Positions 881 to 9,500 of a stretch of 64,000 nt of DNA are shown one piece after another (within the stretch, counting starts at the first letter, position 1; the number at the start of each line of letters is the position of its first letter). The stretch spans positions 124,001 through 188,000 of the forward strand of contig NW_026933663.1 of NCBI RefSeq assembly GCF_032062105.1, read 5' to 3'. The translations under genes were made by a program, and so were the position numbers. Under the pieces are notes generated by a model. The model made no database searches. It saw nothing but the letters and a program-made list of their open reading frames with translations, and was not told the DNA's origin. The stretch is from Saccostrea cucullata. Lineage: Eukaryota.

Positions 881-1553
881 CAAATCTAATCAATAAAAAG
901 AAAGCGATGAATTACAGTATCATTATCGTTTCAAAGGCAATTTTGATACGACTTTTGTGAAGAATTCTAGAATAAAAATTGACTGTAACCTGAATAGTAG
1001 TGATTTTGACTTGAAATAGTTTACATTTGAACAGTGCAATGACTTAAAAGATGGATAGATGCAAATGCAGTTAATTAATTTAATTAAATATCATTTCTTT
1101 TAAATATCGAAAGTTAATAAATTATTTTTTTTTCTTTATCGATGCCACATGTTTGCTAAAATTTAAACCAAAGACAATTTTTTTACGTATTATAAAAACA
1201 AAAATCTACACTCAATATATGAATATCCTGTGAGTCTTTTTTTGTAATCACAAAAAGTATATTTCCTCAAAATAATTTTATCTTTTTTTTTTTTTTTTTA
1301 ACATTTATTTCCATTAACATACAACGAATTTTGAGGCAAAACTTCCTCAGAAGCCCTCGGTTAATACCTCACCTGGGGTGCCAGGAGCTCCCTGGATCGG
1401 TATATTTTTCAATTTACAAAAGTTTACAATAGAGAAAAACCAGTATTTCATTTTCACAAAAAGACATAAATATTTCAGTAAAAAACATTTCATATTTAAT
1501 AGATATATAGATAAAATATCAATTTAATTACAACGTATATAGAAAAATAAAGA

Positions 1554-4500
1554 TTATAATTCGTCTGCTAACTTTTTCAAAAGATAGTAGTTAGATTTAA
1601 CACTTTTTGCACTCTTTGCTATTACATAATACTGATACAAAGACGATTTCAAAAAAAATAACATTGCATTTTGATTTACTATTTCGTTCTGCAACCTACA
1701 TTTCATTTTATATTTATATATTTTGTATCCCACAATTGATATGACATTATTAAAAATCAATGTTGTGTTATTGAACTCATTATAAAATCCTACAACAATA
1801 TGTTTCCAGGATAGATTTAAATTCAATATTTGAGATATTTTTTCCCATACTCCTTTTGAGTCCGTACATTCAAAATTTAAGTGTTTAATATATTCTACTT
1901 GTCCGCAAGATGTACAATTTTTTGCCACTTCTTTATTCCATTTACTAACATGATAATTACAATTCAGTTGGTTGTGTAAAAGTTTAGAATTGAATTCTGC
2001 TATCTGTTTATCGAAAATATTTAGTATCTTAGCTGTATAGATATCTTTCCATTGACCATTCATTATATTGAATTCTTTTGACCATTTAGTTTCCATTATT
2101 GATTTTTGTTTCTTTTTAGAAAGTAAAATTTTATAATAAAATCCCGATTTTTCAAATTTTGGGTTTATACTTTTCCCTTGAAAATAAAAATACGGGTTTT
2201 GTATATTAGTGTTCTTTACATTACAATAATCTATATGTAGTTTTTTAATCGCTTTTTTCATGATAAGATATTCACACAAGTAATTACTCTTTGATTCAAT
2301 GATCTCTTTTACTTCCGTAACATTTTTCATACCTTCTGTTGTAAACATATCTTTTACATATAAAATACCACTTTTTGCCCAATTTTTTAAGTATAATGGT
2401 TTGTTATTTTGTGTAATGAAACTATTAAACCATAGGTTTTCTGTTATTTTATTTCGTGGTGATGTTAACATTTTACACTCGTTAAAGCTACAGAAGATTT
2501 TTTTTATAAAAATTTGGGAATTTATTTAAAATATTGAAATCAGTCGGATTTTTTATATTGCTGCGTAGCAGATATTCAAAATTTATTCCATAAGATTTTA
2601 AAGCGTTATCTAGGAAAATTCTAAGTGAGGAATTTTTATTATATAGTCTTTTGATCCATCCGGCTTTTACGCTTCTTAGTTTGCATTCTATATCAATTAG
2701 ACCAAGACCGCCCTCGTTTATTGGTCTTACGAGTGAATTCCGCTTAATTCGCTCTCTCTTATACCATAAAAAATTTAAATAATTATATTTAAATTCTTAA
2801 TGTATTTAACATCTGGATTTTCAAGAACTGTGAATGCATATACTAATTTAGATACTATTAGTGAATTAATAACGGTACATTTTCCGAAAAGAGTTAAACT
2901 TCTAGTTCTCCATGAATCTAATATTTTTTCAAATTCCTTAAGCTTGTTTAGCCAATTTCTTTCATTATTAGATACTTTGTCATGTCCTAAGAAAATTCCA
3001 AATGATTTAATAGGTTTATTTGTCATTTTAATTCCTTCTACCTCTTCCCATGTGTTTTTAAGCGGCCCTAAGAGAATACCCTTTGTTTTTTCTAAATTTA
3101 ACTTTGTACCAGATATTTCCCCAAAAGATTTTATTACTTTAATAGATTCTTTTAAAGATTCCTGATTTTTCATTGGCAATGTGCAGTCATCTGCATGTTG
3201 CAAACATTTTATTTCGCTTGATTGTCCGATTTTGAAACCTTGTATATTTTCAGAAGCATTTATTTTTAACATCAGGATTTCAATAACAAAAAGAAAAAGC
3301 AATGCTGAGACGGGACACCCTTGTCGAATGCCTCTTGACATTGTACACTTTCTAGTTAACCAGTTATTATTTTTAACATGAAAATAAGGATTTGTGTATA
3401 AAATTTTGATCCATCGAAGGAAATTCTCTCCAAAGTTGAACCTTTTAAGAGTTTGAAACAAGAAAGTCCATTCAACTGAATCAAATGCCTTTTGAAAATC
3501 AGCAAACAATAATATTCCTTCCTCATTATTTTCTTCGCAATAATTGTATATATCCTGTATTAATCTTGCATTTTCACCGATAAATCTTCCCTTAATATAC
3601 CCCGTTTGATTATCATTAATGAGTTTGTCCATAATAGTTTGTAGTCTCTTTGCAAATACGAAAGCTAAAATCTTATAATCGCAATTTGTTAAACTAATAG
3701 GGCGATAGTTATCGAGATTTATCAAGCTTCCTTTTTTGTGTATGAGTGATAAAACAGAAGATCTTTGTGAAGAAGATAATTCGCCTTTCTCAAATGATCT
3801 CACTAGGCTTTCATATAAATAAAATTTTACATATTTCCAAAACATTTTGTAAAATTCCACGGGAATTCCGTCTAATCCCGGTGATTTTTTTAATTTCATA
3901 TTATAAGCGGCTTCTGCACATTCTTCAATTGTTATAACTTTATCGCAATTTTCTCTATCTACATCAGATAGGTAATTAGTAAGTTCGGTTTCTTGTAAAT
4001 ATCTTTTTACATCGTTAATTGATACATTGCTAGACGAGTATAGTTTCTCATAGTATGAACTAAGTGTATTTAAAATTTCTTCTGTTTCATATACACATTT
4101 ATCTCCTACCGATAATTTATTTATGACATTATGTGATTGGTGTTTATTTTCTAGTCTTAAAAAATAGGAGGTGTTTTTTTCACCGTCATCGATCCAACGC
4201 GCTTTGGATCTCACCCTTGCTCCTTTTGATTTATATGTATATAAATTGTCTAATTCTTTTTCCAATTGCTTTTTATGTAGCATATTTATTTCATTTGACT
4301 TAGACATTTCAATTTCTTCAATTTCCTTTTCTATTACTTTAATACGATTGTTTATGCTTTTGTTTTTCTTTTTTGAATATTCAATGCATAACTCTTTTAT
4401 TTCATATTTAATCATTTCCCAACGTATCTGTGGATCTGGTTGGTTATTAATATTTTCAGGCAGATTTTCGAAAAAGGTTTTGATAATGTTACAAAATTCA

Positions 4501-5273
4501 ACATCTTGTAAAATTGACGTATTCAATTTCCAAAAACCATTACCTCTTTCATTTTTTGAGAGGGTGCAGTAAAAAATAAAAGACCTATGGTCACTCATTC
4601 TAGTATTTGAAACATCTGGAGGTTTTCTAAGTAATATTTTTTCGACAGGATAACATAAATTCTCGGAAGTGAATATGTAATCAATTCTACTTTTAGGCTT
4701 ATTATTTGAATCACACCAAGTATTCCCTTCTTTTTCAGGATTAATTTTGTCCCATATGTCAATCAATCGAAATTTAAATTTTAAATCATTAATTATTTTT
4801 GAACATTTATTTTTTGCACTGTGTACTGAATTAAAATCCCCAACTAATATAATGTTTTGTTCATTTAAACAATATTGAGAAACGCATGAAGCAAGTTTTT
4901 TGAAAAATTTACATCTTTCATTTTCTGAATTTGGCGCATATATATTTACTAAATTTATAATGTTCTGTTCATACTCAATATTAATTAAAATTCTCCTTCC
5001 ATCATCTGATTTGTGTATGTTATGAACAATAATTGGTAAACTTTTATGAAATAATACAGATACCCCTCTACTATGGGAAGAGTTGGAAAAACAATGATAG
5101 CTTGAACCTTGCCATCTAGCATTGTAAATATTTTCTCTTTCAGTTATATAATGAGTTTCTTGTAGAAAAACTATTTTGCAATTAGTATCATTAAGCCAAT
5201 CATATAAAGCCTGTCTTTTAGAATAATCATTAAGCCCTCGGGCATTTAACGACAACAACTTTAACGATGACAT
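1554..5273 (-). CDS. LINE ORF2p (APE endonuclease, reverse transcriptase, C-terminal CCHC) interrupted by two compensating frameshifts
   Basis: APE motifs SLNARGL, LQETH, NIYAPN, VGDFN, RIDY, SDH. RT motifs KSPGLDG, YRPISL, DFQKAFD, GIRQGCP, HADD. C-terminal CTSC..H...EC. The segment 2775-2500 reads FLWYKRERIKRNSLVRPINEGGLGLID in a shifted frame (1-nt loss near 2775, 1-nt gain in the T run near 2500). Confidence 0.92.
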
Positions 5274-5322
5274 AAATAGAAGAGTTCTGTGTGTTCATAC
5301 ATCTTAACTTAGACAGTTACCG

Positions 5323-6501
5323 TTAACGTTTCCGTTGATCTCTTTTCCTGCTTTTTCTTAGATTTTCAGCGGCGCAACCAATTATCTCCCCCATCATGTT
5401 TTTCCCTGGCCAGGCCGTTGGTGATGTTTTGATTGTTTCTTCATAAGACAGGCCAGTTCCCCAGTATAGATCATAAACTGGGTGTCCAAAGAACACAGAC
5501 GGCTTAAAGGAGAGTAGTTCGTCTCTCATTTTTTCACACTGTTTTACCTTTTCTGCGATGATTTGTTCCATGACTCCCTTTTCCGTTTCCTTCCATTGAT
5601 CTGATTTTTGGACAAGATTGCCGATACGTTTTGCTTCTAGGGCAGTCTTAGCGTTACGAATGCGCTCAGCTGCACCTACATCACCTGATCTTAGTGCCTT
5701 CGCTGTTTGAAAGGCTTGTTCTGCCGACCTAAATGACTCTCCAAAGATCTTAATCTCACATGGGAAGAAATTTGACAATACATTGTTTTCTCCTTGAAAA
5801 GTTTCCAAATTTTTGGGTTTCACGGGAATGTAGAAATCGCAATCTTCAGATCCTGGTTTGTGCCCCGGTTTTTTGCATACTGCGCAGCACGTCTCGTTTT
5901 CACAATGGAATTTATTGTGCCCATTTTGCCAGCAATTGGTGCATGTGAGTGCTGGTTTGTCTATATGCTGATCTTGATGGTATAGTTTACATTTTAGCCC
6001 GGCACAATATACATTTCTGGGTAGGGTTGCGTTGGGTGGTAATGGATCTATGTATAGAAAACGATTTCCATTTAGAACACTTGTCATTCTTTTTGTTTCT
6101 GGATTTCTAATTTTCTCGTAGTACATTTTAGTTTTGGGTGTGACTTTAAGTTTAGACAACATTTCAAAAACGGCACTATCATCCACTGATAGAGGGAGGC
6201 CGCAGATTGTGACTTTTAGAGACTTATCGTCGGGAGCTTCAAGGCCTGTCGAATATGGATTTGAGTCATATACCTTGACATGTTGGTCTCCAATATCTAA
6301 GCCCTGCAGATTAATGCCATCCCTTCCCTCTTTAGTGTTCAAATAGATCCGCCACAAATCTCTATCTAATTGGATACACCGAATGGTGTCACCAACTACC
6401 TTTGAAGCGCATTGTACAAGCAGAAAATTAGTGACCTTGCCCTCTTTCGAGCCAAGTATTTCACTGTTCTTTAAATAGACCGGCTTTAAGACCTGTGCCA
6501 T
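5323..6501 (-). CDS. LINE ORF1p: RRM-like N-terminus, two zinc knuckles, C-terminal NADAR (YbiA-like) domain
   Basis: KVTICGLPLSVDD and LNGNRFLYI are Tx1/L1 ORF1-type motifs. Knuckles CTNCWQNGHNKFHC (5902-5943) and CAVCKKPGHKPGSEDC (5839-5886). NADAR motifs LSNFF, SAEQAFQTAKA, AKRIG, W..VM..K..Q, DLYWGTG, WPGKNMMG (about 5350-5805). Intact 392 aa. Confidence 0.9.
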   Translation of the reverse strand: MAQVLKPVYLKNSEILGSKEGKVTNFLLVQCASKVVGDTIRCIQLDRDLWRIYLNTKEGRDGINLQGLDIGDQHVKVYDSNPYSTGLEAPDDKSLKVTICGLPLSVDDSAVFEMLSKLKVTPKTKMYYEKIRNPETKRMTSVLNGNRFLYIDPLPPNATLPRNVYCAGLKCKLYHQDQHIDKPALTCTNCWQNGHNKFHCENETCCAVCKKPGHKPGSEDCDFYIPVKPKNLETFQGENNVLSNFFPCEIKIFGESFRSAEQAFQTAKALRSGDVGAAERIRNAKTALEAKRIGNLVQKSDQWKETEKGVMEQIIAEKVKQCEKMRDELLSFKPSVFFGHPVYDLYWGTGLSYEETIKTSPTAWPGKNMMGEIIGCAAENLRKSRKRDQRKR

Positions 6502-9500
6502 TGTTCGATGAACTCAATTCACTGATCTCTCACTCACCGAATTTCACACAATAAACTGATAAACAGGATATACAAAAAGCACATAAATCCAATCAAATAT
6601 TTCACAAATTTCACAAGAAAATATATCTATGTAGTCTTCTGTCCATATAGACCACAAAGAATTTCAAAATATGAAAATAAATCCACAGAACTCGATCAAA
6701 AAAGCGGAGCTCGAAAGGTAACGTCCATACCCTGTGAGCCCGTCACGTGATCTCAAAAAAATAATTTTATCTTAATTATTATTAATTTTATGCAAAAGAA
6801 TATAACTATCATCTACATTTATATTCTTAAAAATTATAACCCTCTGCTTGAACTTATATGCTTTTTCAAAATGTATTATTTTAGTAGAACACAAATATAG
6901 CTTAGGTTAGGAAGCAAAATTGGGAAAAAGAAATACACTTCAACTTGAAAAATCTATAAGCATCTAACGAATAATAGACTTTTATGTCATTAAGAGATAT
7001 CTATCTTATTAGAGTATCATTGACAAAGATAATACAGAGCAATACCGGTAATAAGAACTGATGATTATCTTAGTAAAACAGGTCAAATGCCCGTTGCATT
7101 AAAATAAGATGTCCCGAAAAGTTAATGATATAAACCTTGTTTATTTATTATCTTTTTTTATCTATTTGAATTGTTGCAATGTTTTAACTCAATTATTTAT
7201 TCTCCAATGTAAGTTAAAGTGCATGTTTATATTATTTCACAGTTATTTTTCACATTTTGAAAGACAGAGCAGTCCATGTTTCACCAGAAGAAGAATTTAC
7301 AGATTTATTGGTAATTTTTTCTCTTTAATTCATCATATTTTAGGAACGCAGTACAGCTGAGGCTGCATAAATGAGGCGGAGCCTGATTTTTACGGAAAAT
7401 ATAATTAATTACGCCACGAAAAATTAACTTTTTTTTCTTTCAGAAAACAATAAAATGCAAAGATATGCTCGTTATGTAATTTTTGTATCGTTTCAAACCA
7501 TCTTTGATGCCCTTGCATACTATACTTACTAGACAGCGAGGATTAAGTATTCAAACTAATAACTCCAGTCAGGTGTGGAGCAAAAATTAGATGTGGAATA
7601 AAATGTCATGTATTACAGAGCATTTTAAGGAGAAACCATATACACTTAAATCAATGTAAACAAAAATGGATAAGCAGTTTTCATTTTTTTTTCCAGGGAA
7701 AAAGAATACCGTTATATATGCACTTTCTTCCTGTGCAGTTATTAAAGGCTGGACGCTGGAATTTTCCTGGATCATACGTTACGGAAACATTAGAGAAAAT
7801 ATTTAATCAGCAATCAATACAATTTATCTTTGAAAAGGTAAGCTTTTAAAAATCTTTCTCCTTTCAAAACAGAGATAAAATATTTATTGTCAAGATGAAT
7901 TTAATTGACAAATATTTCTTGAAATTTCCATGCTTAAAAATTATTTCAAATTAAAAACCAAGTACAAGCTTGTATTCTAAAGTTGGTTCCTTAGATTAAG
8001 TCTATTTTTGTCAAGAAAAAGTTTTAGCCACAAACGATCGACATGTGAGTTGATTAGTTTGTCCTTTTGTACTTAACGGAAGTGATTTTTTTTGCACCAG
8101 GATCGACGTTGTGTGTATATGTTGTGTATGTTAGGTGGGGCGTGGTTAAGAAAGTACATGCGTAACAAACGTAAAACAATTAATAATTCATGTTAAGTTC
8201 ACTTAGCTCCTTTGTAGATGAATGCTCTGCTTAATTGTGCCTTTGTTGTTATTAGATAATCAATATTCCAGAATTTAGCAAGAAGGGTAAAAAGCGGTCA
8301 AAATAAATTTACAAAGATCTCGGTTCAATTTATGCACAAAATGGTCCTATAGACATACCAATTGATTGATTAACAATTGATGTTCCATTTGAAGCATTAA
8401 AATAAAATATAAACTTAGTGCTTTAATTTCGTATCAATTTTTTCTCTTAAATGTCCAGGTCTTGGAGAAGTGAACTTACATGTATGAAATTGCAATTTTC
8501 TTGAATTTTAAGTTAAGTAGGTACAGTGTACATGTATATATGAGTACTTTTACTGAAGAAAAATAATAAAAGCACACTCTCTGATCTTAAATATAAAACA
8601 TGTCTTGTAATTCTCAGAAACAGTTCTTCATTTCCTAGTTGCATGTTTTAGATCAGACGTTGCGCTCTATATTAAATAACAAAAAATATCTTTGAAAAAT
8701 AGCCGTTTTGTAGAATTTTTTAAGAATAGAAAATTGACGCATTTCGTGACGTCTTAATGCATCGACTAGCTAGAAAATTACGTCATTTTTAAAGATACGC
8801 AATAAACAAAGATCTACGTGTTAGTCAATGCGTTGTTAACTAAAACTTCAGTTTTTCAGAAATTCACCGGGCCAAAAAAAAGGCAAAGGTGAACCTTGTT
8901 CTTTCTCCATGCACCTTTTTTGCCATGTCTTTGACTTGGAACAAAATTTTGATTAGAGATAAAAAGCCCATCTATACATGTATTTCAATATTTAATGTTC
9001 AGAATATGGAAGAAGACTTTAAATTTGGATTGTTCGAAGACCTTAGAAAAACAACAGAATCCGCATATGAGCCTCCGAAGTATACTGGTAAATATTTACC
9101 TTAGAGTTAATAATTAACGGCTATTTATTACATGTTTATTAAAAATGCTTTAATAACAAGATCGCTGACCTCGAGGGATCTATGCAAATTTGTTTTGAGA
9201 AACAACTTTGAGTTCACTTTGATAATACTTTGACTAATTTTTAAGGGATTTTCTTGCATATGATTATGTGCATTAGGAAGATTCTAGACTATATATATTG
9301 TCGAAAAATTGAAAATCCTTTCGGCCAATTTTTATGGATTGCCGAAATTTAACAAAAATTACACGAACGTAATTTCCTGTATTCTCATAAAAACAAACGC
9401 AAATATACTCATAGTTTAATTGTTTTTGGAGGATCTTAACAAGTAGATGAAAGGTACCCATAAATTCCACGAAAATTAATCCATCAAGAAATTTAATGAT

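What the first reader, a model, noticed from the sequence alone, without database searches (positions are those of the whole stretch)
5323..6501. LINE retrotransposon whose ORF1 carries a NADAR (YbiA) ADP-ribose-hydrolase domain: possible transposon counter-defence system
Seen in sequence: ORF1 of a complete, TSD-flanked L1/Tx1 element continues in frame past its two zinc knuckles into about 150 aa with the ordered NADAR motifs LSNFF, SAEQAFQTAKA, AKRIG, W..VM, K..Q..R..LL, DLYWGTG, GKNMMG. For comparison, E. coli YbiA as I recall it has FSNF, SEHYFQAQKF, DAYWGDG, GKNRLG. The Glu/Lys of the SAE..K motif and the Asp of DxxWG are kept; the usual Glu of E(H/A)xxxD is Gly here. The domain is inside the element, 49 nt before the ORF2 start, so it travels with it. 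Established knowledge: NADAR proteins hydrolyse N-glycosidic bonds and reverse guanine ADP-ribosylation of DNA in DarT1-NADAR toxin-antitoxin systems; bivalves have a guanine-specific DNA ADP-ribosyltransferase (CARP-1, pierisin family); the accessory ORF1 domains I know of are esterase and PHD. Inference: ORF1p coats the element RNA, so a tethered NADAR could strip ADP-ribose from RNA, cDNA or the RNP and counter host ADP-ribosylation defence. I am not aware of this fusion being described, but could not search.
Basis: partly seen in the sequence, partly recalled or inferred. Interest (0 to 1): 0.92.

Follow-up and report, generated by a model that had tools for sequence, protein, structure and literature searches.

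The report
Oyster LINE ORF1 with NADAR enzyme
A jumping gene (an L1/Tx1-type LINE) in an oyster genome has an RNA-binding protein that ends in a well-conserved NADAR enzyme domain, the kind that strips ADP-ribose from DNA and RNA bases. The fusion is real, shared by the whole family and under selection, but a 2025 paper already noted it in oysters and its role is untested.

Summary
Observation confirmed. Window 5323-6501 (minus strand) is an intact 392-aa ORF1. It has two RRM folds, two CCHC knuckles and a C-terminal NADAR domain (Pfam 8e-23; fold match to Phytophthora NADAR 8BAU, Z 18.3). It lies 49 nt upstream of an APE+RT ORF2, in a 5.5-kb, poly(A)-tailed LINE flanked by a perfect 15-bp target-site duplication.

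Two corrections:
- This copy's ORF2 has lost its frame, so the element is full-length but not intact.
- The "missing" Glu is better read as a shifted catalytic position. It is Glu in 61% of relatives and His in one well-supported clade of 31 sequences that includes this copy. His is also the phage gp30.3 NADAR state, and that enzyme is active.

The fusion is family-wide. The genome holds at least 105 scored ORF1 copies at 43-100% identity, and 77 of them have no stop codons. Relatives occur in Saccostrea, Crassostrea and Pinctada. dN/dS on the NADAR part is about 0.1.

It is not new. Genome Biol 2025 (PMC12477816) reports YbiA-family NADAR domains in ORF1 of Crassostrea gigas Tx1 LINEs. This scan also found the same fusion on other DNA of this genome.

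The counter-defence reading stays a plausible, untested hypothesis. No DarT or Scabin-type transferase was found in the host, but those searches were not decisive.

The parts
6758..6772 (-). 5' copy of the target-site duplication (AGATAAAATTATTTT), separated from the element by 4 nt (TTTG)
   Evidence: identical 15-mer at both junctions
6502..6753 (-). 5' UTR of the LINE (252 nt). The element starts with AGATCACGTG, as its sibling copies do
   Evidence: homology with siblings L032, L033 and L035 begins at 6753/6752
5323..6501 (-). ORF1, 392 aa, intact: RRM1 (aa ~5-80), RRM2 (aa ~93-177), two CCHC knuckles (187-200, 206-221), NADAR domain (aa ~228-392)
5326..5820 (-). NADAR domain of ORF1 (aa 228-392). 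Key residues: S243-N244-F245, E261, K268, H340 (family E/H position), D344, W347, G366-x-N368
5274..5322 (-). 49-nt spacer between ORF1 and ORF2
1554..5273 (-). ORF2 (APE endonuclease + reverse transcriptase). It aligns end to end with human L1 ORF2p. In this copy the frame is lost between about 2776 and 2505, with 12 in-frame stops in that stretch
1284..1553 (-). 3' UTR with AATAAA signal and a poly(A) tail of about 16 nt
1269..1283 (-). 3' copy of the target-site duplication

Best explanation
This is a full-length copy, with a broken ORF2, of an oyster L1/Tx1-type LINE family. Its ORF1 protein is a type-I RNA chaperone (two RRMs plus CCHC knuckles) extended by a catalytically competent NADAR domain.

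Shown here: the domain is a true NADAR by sequence and fold. It is carried by every lineage of a large, old, still diversifying family, and it evolves under strong purifying selection.

Inferred: ORF1p coats the element's RNA and so tethers an N-glycosidic ADP-ribosyl hydrolase to the LINE ribonucleoprotein. There it would remove base-linked ADP-ribose (guanine-N2 or cytosine adducts) from the element's RNA, its nascent cDNA or the target DNA. Such adducts would otherwise block translation or target-primed reverse transcription.

The likeliest reason this is selected is to neutralise a host (or other) nucleic-acid ADP-ribosyltransferase. That would parallel phage gp30.3 NADARs acting against DarT1 and viral macrodomains acting against PARPs.
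For: Domain identity:
- Pfam 81.9 bits, TIGR02464 above cut-off, 8BAU Z 18.3 and YbiA Z 15.8.

Catalytic residues. Mutating the counterparts of these residues abolishes guanine-ADPr hydrolysis or DarT1 rescue (PMC11543638):
- E261 is kept in 93/94 and K268 in 94/94 family members; W347 in 91/94.
- In 41 more distant ORF1-NADAR representatives E261 is kept in 40/41 and W347 in 41/41.

Last-strand charged position:
- It is Glu in 57/94 and His in 32/94.
- His arose essentially once and is then invariant in a 31-row clade (SH-aLRT 99).
- His is the state in phage gp30.3 NADARs, which hydrolyse G-ADPr (PMC11125620).

Selection on the NADAR part:
- omega 0.08 against an 80%-identical relative.
- omega 0.09-0.12 for sub-family pairs with dS 0.3-0.4.
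- Synonymous sites are saturated between sub-families that still share 50-68% of residues.

Spread:
- At least 105 scored copies of 667 candidates; 77 have no stops.
- At least 52 of the top 146 clusters at 50% identity share the RRM + knuckle + NADAR layout.
- ORF2 with APE/RT lies downstream in unrelated contigs.

Biochemical plausibility:
- All tested NADAR subtypes, including eukaryotic and sponge enzymes, reverse G- or C-ADPr. Pierisin-family transferases modify both DNA and RNA.

Parallel cases:
- NADAR domains sit in replicases of invertebrate RNA viruses, including a Pacific oyster nidovirus (PMC12377751; PMC11848433).
- They also sit in Ectocarpus Gypsy Pol.
Against: - No enzymatic data exist for any transposon-borne NADAR.
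- No substrate-producing transferase was identified in this genome. DarT and Scabin-like searches were negative, but their controls were silent. Only three generic ARTC-like ORFs of unknown specificity were found.
- Guanine-ADP-ribosylating activity is documented in clams, not oysters.
- The canonical Glu column is Gly in this copy. The claim that H340 takes over rests on alignment and conservation, not on model coordinates.
- Evidence for transcription is thin: 21-42 oligo-dT reads per run, plus contigs from metatranscriptomes that may contain DNA.
- Selection shows that the domain matters to the element. It does not show what the domain acts on.
Confidence: 0.4

Rival explanations
1. Housekeeping RNA processing for the element itself, not counter-defence. 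The NADAR would clear NAD- or ADP-ribose-derived groups (for example on RNA ends or caps) that arise during normal RNA metabolism. This would mature or stabilise the LINE RNA intermediate.
For: This is what the only paper noting the fusion suggests (PMC12477816), following de Souza and Aravind's prediction for RNA-virus NADARs. In nidoviruses NADAR is often linked with cap O-methyltransferase and macrodomains (PMC11848433). The conservation and selection data fit this reading equally well.
Against: Known NADAR activities are on N-glycosidic base-ADPr bonds and riboflavin intermediates. No RNA-end or cap activity has been shown. Most LINEs, including close L1 relatives, do without such a domain, so it is not a general requirement of retrotransposition.
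Confidence: 0.27
2. Non-catalytic module. The NADAR fold serves as an ADP-ribose, NAD or nucleic-acid binding domain (a reader), for example to target the RNP to ADP-ribosylated chromatin or DNA breaks.
For: The canonical Glu column is Gly/Ala/Val in the oyster group. D344 is Asn or Ser in 14 of 94 sequences. ADP-ribose marks DNA nicks, which are relevant to target-primed reverse transcription (established knowledge).
Against: The catalytic Glu261 and Lys268 are invariant. The adjacent position 340 is restricted to Glu or His, both catalytic states in known NADARs, with a single clade-wide switch. The wider family keeps the canonical Glu in 32 of 41 representatives.
Confidence: 0.1
3. Small-molecule N-glycosidase of the YbiA or riboflavin-intermediate type, as automatic annotation ('ribA/ribD-fused uncharacterized protein') would name it.
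For: TIGR02464 scores above its trusted cut-off. JGI names for homologues use this label.
Against: Animals do not synthesise riboflavin (established knowledge). The domain is fused to an RNA-binding transposon protein. YbiA-type NADARs also hydrolyse G- and C-ADPr. This copy lacks the YbiA-defining Glu.
Confidence: 0.03
4. One-off capture or artefact: a host exon or an assembly chimera joined to ORF1 in this copy only, decaying neutrally.
For: None found.
Against: At least 105 copies at 43-100% identity carry the same layout, most of them open. Siblings have their own TSDs. omega is about 0.1. The same layout occurs in other oyster and pearl-oyster genomes and in unrelated contigs.
Confidence: 0.01

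Closest known systems
Tx1 LINE families of Crassostrea gigas in Repbase with NADAR-bearing ORF1 (noted in PMC12477816, Genome Biol 2025)
   Same: Same host group (oysters) and same element type. The same YbiA-family NADAR is fused to ORF1. C. gigas LOC105336225 is a direct homologue.
   Different: Different genome: the nearest named protein is from Saccostrea cucullata, about 1% away from a copy of another sub-family in this genome. The paper gives one sentence and a supplementary alignment. It reports no selection test, no fold, no catalytic-residue analysis and no Glu-to-His clade.
Phytophthora nicotianae NADAR (PDB 8BAU) and E. coli YbiA (2B3W)
   Same: Same fold (Z 18.3 and 15.8). Same catalytic Glu and Lys, and the D-x-x-W-G motif.
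   Different: Those are free-standing enzymes with a Glu in the last strand. Here the domain is the C-terminus of a transposon RNA-binding protein, with Gly-His at that place.
Phage gp30.3 NADARs (T4-like), orphan antitoxin-like counter-defence against DarTG1
   Same: A mobile genetic parasite carries a NADAR without a cognate toxin. His is the last-strand catalytic residue. The domain hits phrog_1017 at 2e-30.
   Different: Prokaryotic virus, free-standing protein, known target (DarT1). Here the host is an animal and no transferase is identified.
Type-I LINE ORF1 proteins (RRM + CCHC knuckles) and ORF1 proteins with accessory esterase or PHD domains
   Same: The tandem RRM plus CCHC core is predicted by fold. 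An extra enzymatic or reader domain is appended to ORF1p.
   Different: The accessory domain is a NADAR rather than an esterase or PHD. The N-terminal 227 aa have no Pfam match at all.
NADAR and macrodomains in replicases of invertebrate nidoviruses (e.g. Pacific oyster nidovirus 1, yellow head virus)
   Same: An RNA-based genetic parasite of marine invertebrates carries a NADAR inside its replication machinery.
   Different: RNA virus polyprotein, not a retrotransposon. Its function is equally untested.

Membership tests
NADAR superfamily (PF08719) | Profile match above the curated threshold | tested here: met
   81.9 bits against a cut-off of 35.1, aa 238-379. A family profile matches 8BAU at 1.2e-13.
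NADAR superfamily (PF08719) | YbiA-like fold (helical core flanked by two small sheets) | tested here: met
   AF2 pLDDT 91.5. 8BAU: Z 18.3, rmsd 2.0 A over 157 aa. 2B3W: Z 15.8. Foldseek E=5.7e-8.
NADAR superfamily (PF08719) | Catalytic Glu and phosphate-binding Lys (E43/K50 of P. nicotianae NADAR; E88/K95 of E. coli C7 NADAR) | tested here: met
   E261 and K268 align to them. They are kept in 93/94 and 94/94 family members.
NADAR superfamily (PF08719) | [quoted passage not shown] | tested here: inconclusive
   The canonical column is G339 here. The next residue, H340, ends the last strand (model strand 337-339). That position is E in 57 and H in 32 of 94 family members. Distant relatives have Glu in the canonical column. 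No model coordinates were available to check the geometry.
NADAR superfamily (PF08719) | N-glycosidic (base-ADP-ribose) hydrolase activity | not testable with these tools
   Needs an enzyme assay.
YbiA subfamily / TIGR02464 riboflavin-intermediate N-glycosidase | Glu in the last strand; riboflavin-pathway context | tested here: not met
   TIGR02464 scores 83.4 against 73.7. However, this copy has Gly-His instead of the Glu, and the context is a LINE in an animal.
DarT1-associated NADAR (BC4488 family, DarG1 antitoxin) | Asp in the last strand and an adjacent DarT1 toxin gene | tested here: not met
   There is no Asp at that place. The neighbouring gene is LINE ORF2. No DarT match in the genome, though the control was silent.
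L1/Tx1-type LINE (non-LTR retrotransposon) | ORF2 with APE endonuclease and reverse transcriptase collinear with L1 ORF2p | tested here: met
   PF03372 and PF00078. Human L1 ORF2p 8SXT matches at E=2e-73 over aa 3-817.
L1/Tx1-type LINE (non-LTR retrotransposon) | Poly(A) tail and variable-length target-site duplications at independent insertions | tested here: met
   15-bp TSD here. The siblings have 13-bp TSDs of their own, and all have poly(A) tails.
L1/Tx1-type LINE (non-LTR retrotransposon) | Placement in the Tx1 clade by RT phylogeny against reference elements | not tested
   No Repbase or Dfam reference set was at hand. 'Tx1' rests on PMC12477816's label for the C. gigas relatives.

The most novel reading that the evidence does not exclude
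The LINE-borne NADAR is an anti-restriction enzyme. Molluscs would then possess a so-far undescribed defence that ADP-ribosylates bases in the RNA or cDNA of retroelements and RNA viruses. Oyster LINEs, oyster nidoviruses and other invertebrate RNA viruses would each have acquired NADAR domains independently to erase that mark. The clade-wide Glu-to-His switch would be a step in that arms race.
Probability: 0.22. Interest if true: 0.85.

Novelty: new member of a known kind. Interest (0 to 1): 0.45.

Why it matters
ORF1 proteins of LINEs are thought of as RNA chaperones. Enzymatic add-ons are rare: an esterase is the main known case.

A selected NADAR hydrolase riding on the LINE RNP implies that nucleic-acid ADP-ribosylation, or a related N-glycosidic adduct, is a real obstacle to retrotransposition in molluscs. 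NADAR domains also occur in invertebrate RNA-virus replicases, including an oyster nidovirus. Together these point to a testable animal counterpart of the bacterial DarT/NADAR and phage gp30.3 conflict, and they offer a natural entry point to the unknown physiological role of animal NADARs.

The bare fact of the fusion is already published. What this report adds is the evidence for selection, the fold, the catalytic-residue pattern and the hypothesis.

Tried and rejected
- **dN/dS between sub-families** failed because synonymous sites are saturated. I used closer pairs instead.
- **NADAR-less sister ORF1.** Searching with the N-terminal 227 aa returned only fragments of the same family. Pfam finds nothing in that region.
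- **Free-standing host NADAR as donor.** The best candidate, C. virginica LOC111120284, proved to be a LINE ORF1 fragment. It is 66% identical to copies sitting inside 436-aa open frames in this genome. All 150 scored NADAR matches in the genome look like ORF1.
- **Host transferases.** Scabin-like PF22596 and DarT PF14487 gave no match. The control genomes were also silent, so this does not show absence.
- **Taxonomy of distant ORF1-NADAR representatives.** The clusters carry no names. The assembly accessions GCA_029979725.1 and GCA_003704795.1 were not found in the paper library. The Atlas shows only Mollusca. Spread beyond molluscs therefore stays open.
- **P0005** (Saccostrea) could not be looked up for DNA.
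- One paper reading failed on a term that was too short.

Full report
**What is there**

On the minus strand, window 5323-6501 is an uninterrupted 392-codon ORF. Its C-terminal 150 residues match the NADAR family well above threshold:
- Pfam PF08719: E=8.3e-23, 81.9 bits against a gathering score of 35.1.
- NCBIfam TIGR02464: 83.4 bits against 73.7.
- PHROG 1017: E=2e-30.
- Two solved NADARs by sequence: 8BAU at 3e-7 and E. coli YbiA 2B3W at 7.5e-7.

An AlphaFold2 model built on 62 homologues is confident (mean pLDDT 91.5). Residues 228-387 superpose on the Phytophthora nicotianae NADAR-ADP-ribose structure with Z 18.3 and rmsd 2.0 A over 157 residues. They superpose on YbiA with Z 15.8. Nothing else exceeds Z 8.3 (Foldseek agrees).

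The N-terminal half has no Pfam match. It folds as two RRM domains (aa ~5-80 and ~93-177, Z about 8 to many RRMs). These are followed by two CCHC knuckles at 187-200 and 206-221. So ORF1p is a classical RRM + knuckle LINE chaperone with a NADAR enzyme domain appended.

**The element**

Homology with three sibling copies (95.9-97.5% identity over 5.5 kb) starts at 6753/6752 and ends near 1276-1285. The layout is:
- 252-nt 5' UTR
- ORF1
- 49-nt spacer
- ORF2
- 3' UTR of about 270 nt with AATAAA and a poly(A) tail

A perfect 15-bp target-site duplication sits at 6772-6758 and 1283-1269. The siblings lie in unrelated flanks and have their own TSDs, so they are independent insertions.

ORF2 has APE and RT domains. 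It aligns end to end with human L1 ORF2p (E=2e-73), which places the element in the L1/Tx1 group. I could not test the finer Tx1 assignment for lack of reference elements.

In this copy ORF2 loses its frame between about 2776 and 2505. It shows two single-base length differences relative to a sibling and has 12 stops in that stretch. The copy is therefore full-length but not autonomous. Of the three full-length siblings examined, one keeps a 1,239-codon ORF2 open.

**The fusion belongs to the family**

A six-frame search of the 1.17-Gb assembly with ORF1 gave 105 scored matches out of 667 candidates. Nearly all cover the whole protein including the NADAR part, at 100% down to 43% identity, and 77 have no stop.

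Protein databases hold 78-95 further clusters with the same layout. The named ones come from Saccostrea cucullata, Crassostrea gigas and Pinctada imbricata. A copy from another sub-family in this genome is about 1% from a S. cucullata protein, so the genome is that oyster or a close relative.

An exhaustive search with the NADAR part alone found 931 clusters (at 50% identity) with E<=1e-10. Among the top 146, at least 52 combine the homologous RRM region, a knuckle and the NADAR. Where contigs could be fetched, an APE/RT ORF2 follows. The only phylum label I could obtain is Mollusca.

**Selection**

Between sub-families, synonymous sites are saturated while 50-68% of residues are shared.

For closer pairs the NADAR part gives:
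- omega = 0.08 against an 80%-identical relative (dS 1.4)
- omega = 0.11 (dS 0.39)
- omega = 0.09 (dS 0.33)
- mostly 0-0.3 within sub-families

I chose copies with open frames, which biases omega downwards a little. That cannot explain values near 0.1.

**Catalytic residues**

The Glu and Lys whose substitution abolishes guanine-ADPr hydrolysis or DarT1 rescue in E. coli C7 NADAR (PMC11543638) correspond to E261 and K268. They are kept in 93/94 and 94/94 family members. W347 and the G-x-N-x-x-G motif are near-invariant too.

In an ungapped alignment that is correct. However, the next column (position 340) is Glu in 57 and His in 32 of 94 sequences. In 41 more distant ORF1-NADAR proteins, Glu sits in the canonical column in 32. 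The oyster group therefore seems to carry a one-residue shift.

On the family tree, His occupies one clade of 31 rows (SH-aLRT 99), including this copy, plus one stray. That makes two changes in all.

According to PMC11125620, this position is Glu in YbiA-type, Asp in DarT1-linked and His in phage gp30.3 NADARs, and all four tested subtypes reverse guanine ADP-ribosylation. A single switch between two catalytically valid states, followed by strict retention, argues for an active enzyme rather than a decaying or purely binding module. I could not check side-chain geometry because model coordinates are not exposed.

**Function**

What is shown is an enzyme-like, selected NADAR tethered to the LINE's RNA-binding protein. 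What follows is inference.

Known NADAR substrates are N-glycosidic:
- riboflavin intermediates (irrelevant in an animal)
- guanine-N2-ADPr on ssDNA
- cytosine-ADPr, as shown in 2026. That work includes a sponge NADAR, and the writers used (ScARP, Scabin) modify both DNA and RNA.

The most economical mechanism is removal of base-linked ADP-ribose from the element's RNA, cDNA or target DNA.

Whether the writer is a host defence enzyme is open:
- Searches of this genome found no DarT and no Scabin-type domain. The control genomes were silent too, so this is not evidence of absence.
- Three intronless ARTC-like ORFs exist (PF01129/PF03496). Their specificity is unknown.
- CARP-1-type activity is documented in clams, not oysters.

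Circumstantial support comes from convergence:
- NADAR domains occur in phages, giant viruses and replicases of invertebrate RNA viruses such as yellow head, gill-associated and nido-like viruses.
- A Pacific oyster nidovirus encodes NADAR, YbiA-like and macro domains (PMC12377751). NADAR insertions recur across invertebrate nidoviruses (PMC11848433).
- Phage orphan NADARs are proven counter-defence against DarTG1 (PMC11825919, abstract).

The main rival is a housekeeping RNA-processing role, as the authors of the Ectocarpus paper propose.

**Expression**

Three oligo-dT RNA-seq runs of the same species label gave only 21-42 reads each at 95% identity or more. Most fall in the 3' part, with a few over ORF1. 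Contigs from a metatranscriptomic run cover 29 of 30 bins, but such libraries can contain DNA. Transcription is therefore weakly supported.

**Novelty**

PMC12477816 (Genome Biol 2025) states that ORF1 proteins of several Tx1 LINE families of Crassostrea gigas carry YbiA-family NADAR domains, alongside Ectocarpus Gypsy elements, and it speculates on RNA processing. Full-text searches found no other description.

Earlier notes of this scan report the same fusion on other pieces of this genome and reach the same verdict. So this is a new member of a known, barely characterised kind.

New here are the fold evidence, the selection test, the size of the family, the Glu/His clade structure and the link to invertebrate RNA-virus NADARs.

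Noticed in passing
L036 (G000:C12407:366074-369547), L038 (same contig, about 15 kb away), L037 (G000:C9166:164402-167941): Three intronless ORFs of 288-322 aa with ARTC-type ADP-ribosyltransferase domains (PF01129; one also hits PF03496, exoenzyme type). The weak PDB similarity is to bacterial effector ARTs such as HopU1. Two of them lie in tandem. They are possible writers of ADP-ribose marks in this oyster, but their specificity is unknown.
   Followed up: partly
P0134 (Haliotis rufescens LOC124129589, 4240 aa); P0133 (1075 aa); P0143 (870 aa): Giant proteins with 4-7 tandem NADAR domains. The named one is from an abalone. These multi-NADAR proteins scored highest in the exhaustive search with the LINE NADAR domain. 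Their role is unknown.
   Followed up: partly
P0146 = Crassostrea virginica LOC111120284 (XP_022316717.1): This annotated 185-aa 'gene' is most likely a fragment of a LINE ORF1 NADAR. It is 64-66% identical to the NADAR ends of 413-438-aa ORF1-like open frames in this genome. In the search of this genome, every scored NADAR match looked like ORF1.
   Followed up: yes
BFVD hits of model ma097476e9d43: NADAR folds are embedded in replicase polyproteins of crustacean and other invertebrate RNA viruses (yellow head virus, gill-associated virus, Wenling nido-like virus, Ingleside virus). Several unnamed pieces over 1000 aa from invertebrate viromes rank first.
   Followed up: partly
L035 5' junction; window 6754-6757: Extra bases lie between the 5' TSD copy and the element start: 4 nt (TTTG) in the window copy and about 14 nt in L035. 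Siblings start with either AGATCAC or GATCAC. This is typical 5' junction heterogeneity of target-primed reverse transcription. The start carries a CACGTG palindrome.
   Followed up: no
family tree, 12-row clade with Pinctada imbricata proteins: In one clade D344 (the Asp of D-x-x-W-G) is Asn or Ser in nearly all members, while E340 is kept. This is a second lineage-specific change in the active-site region.
   Followed up: no
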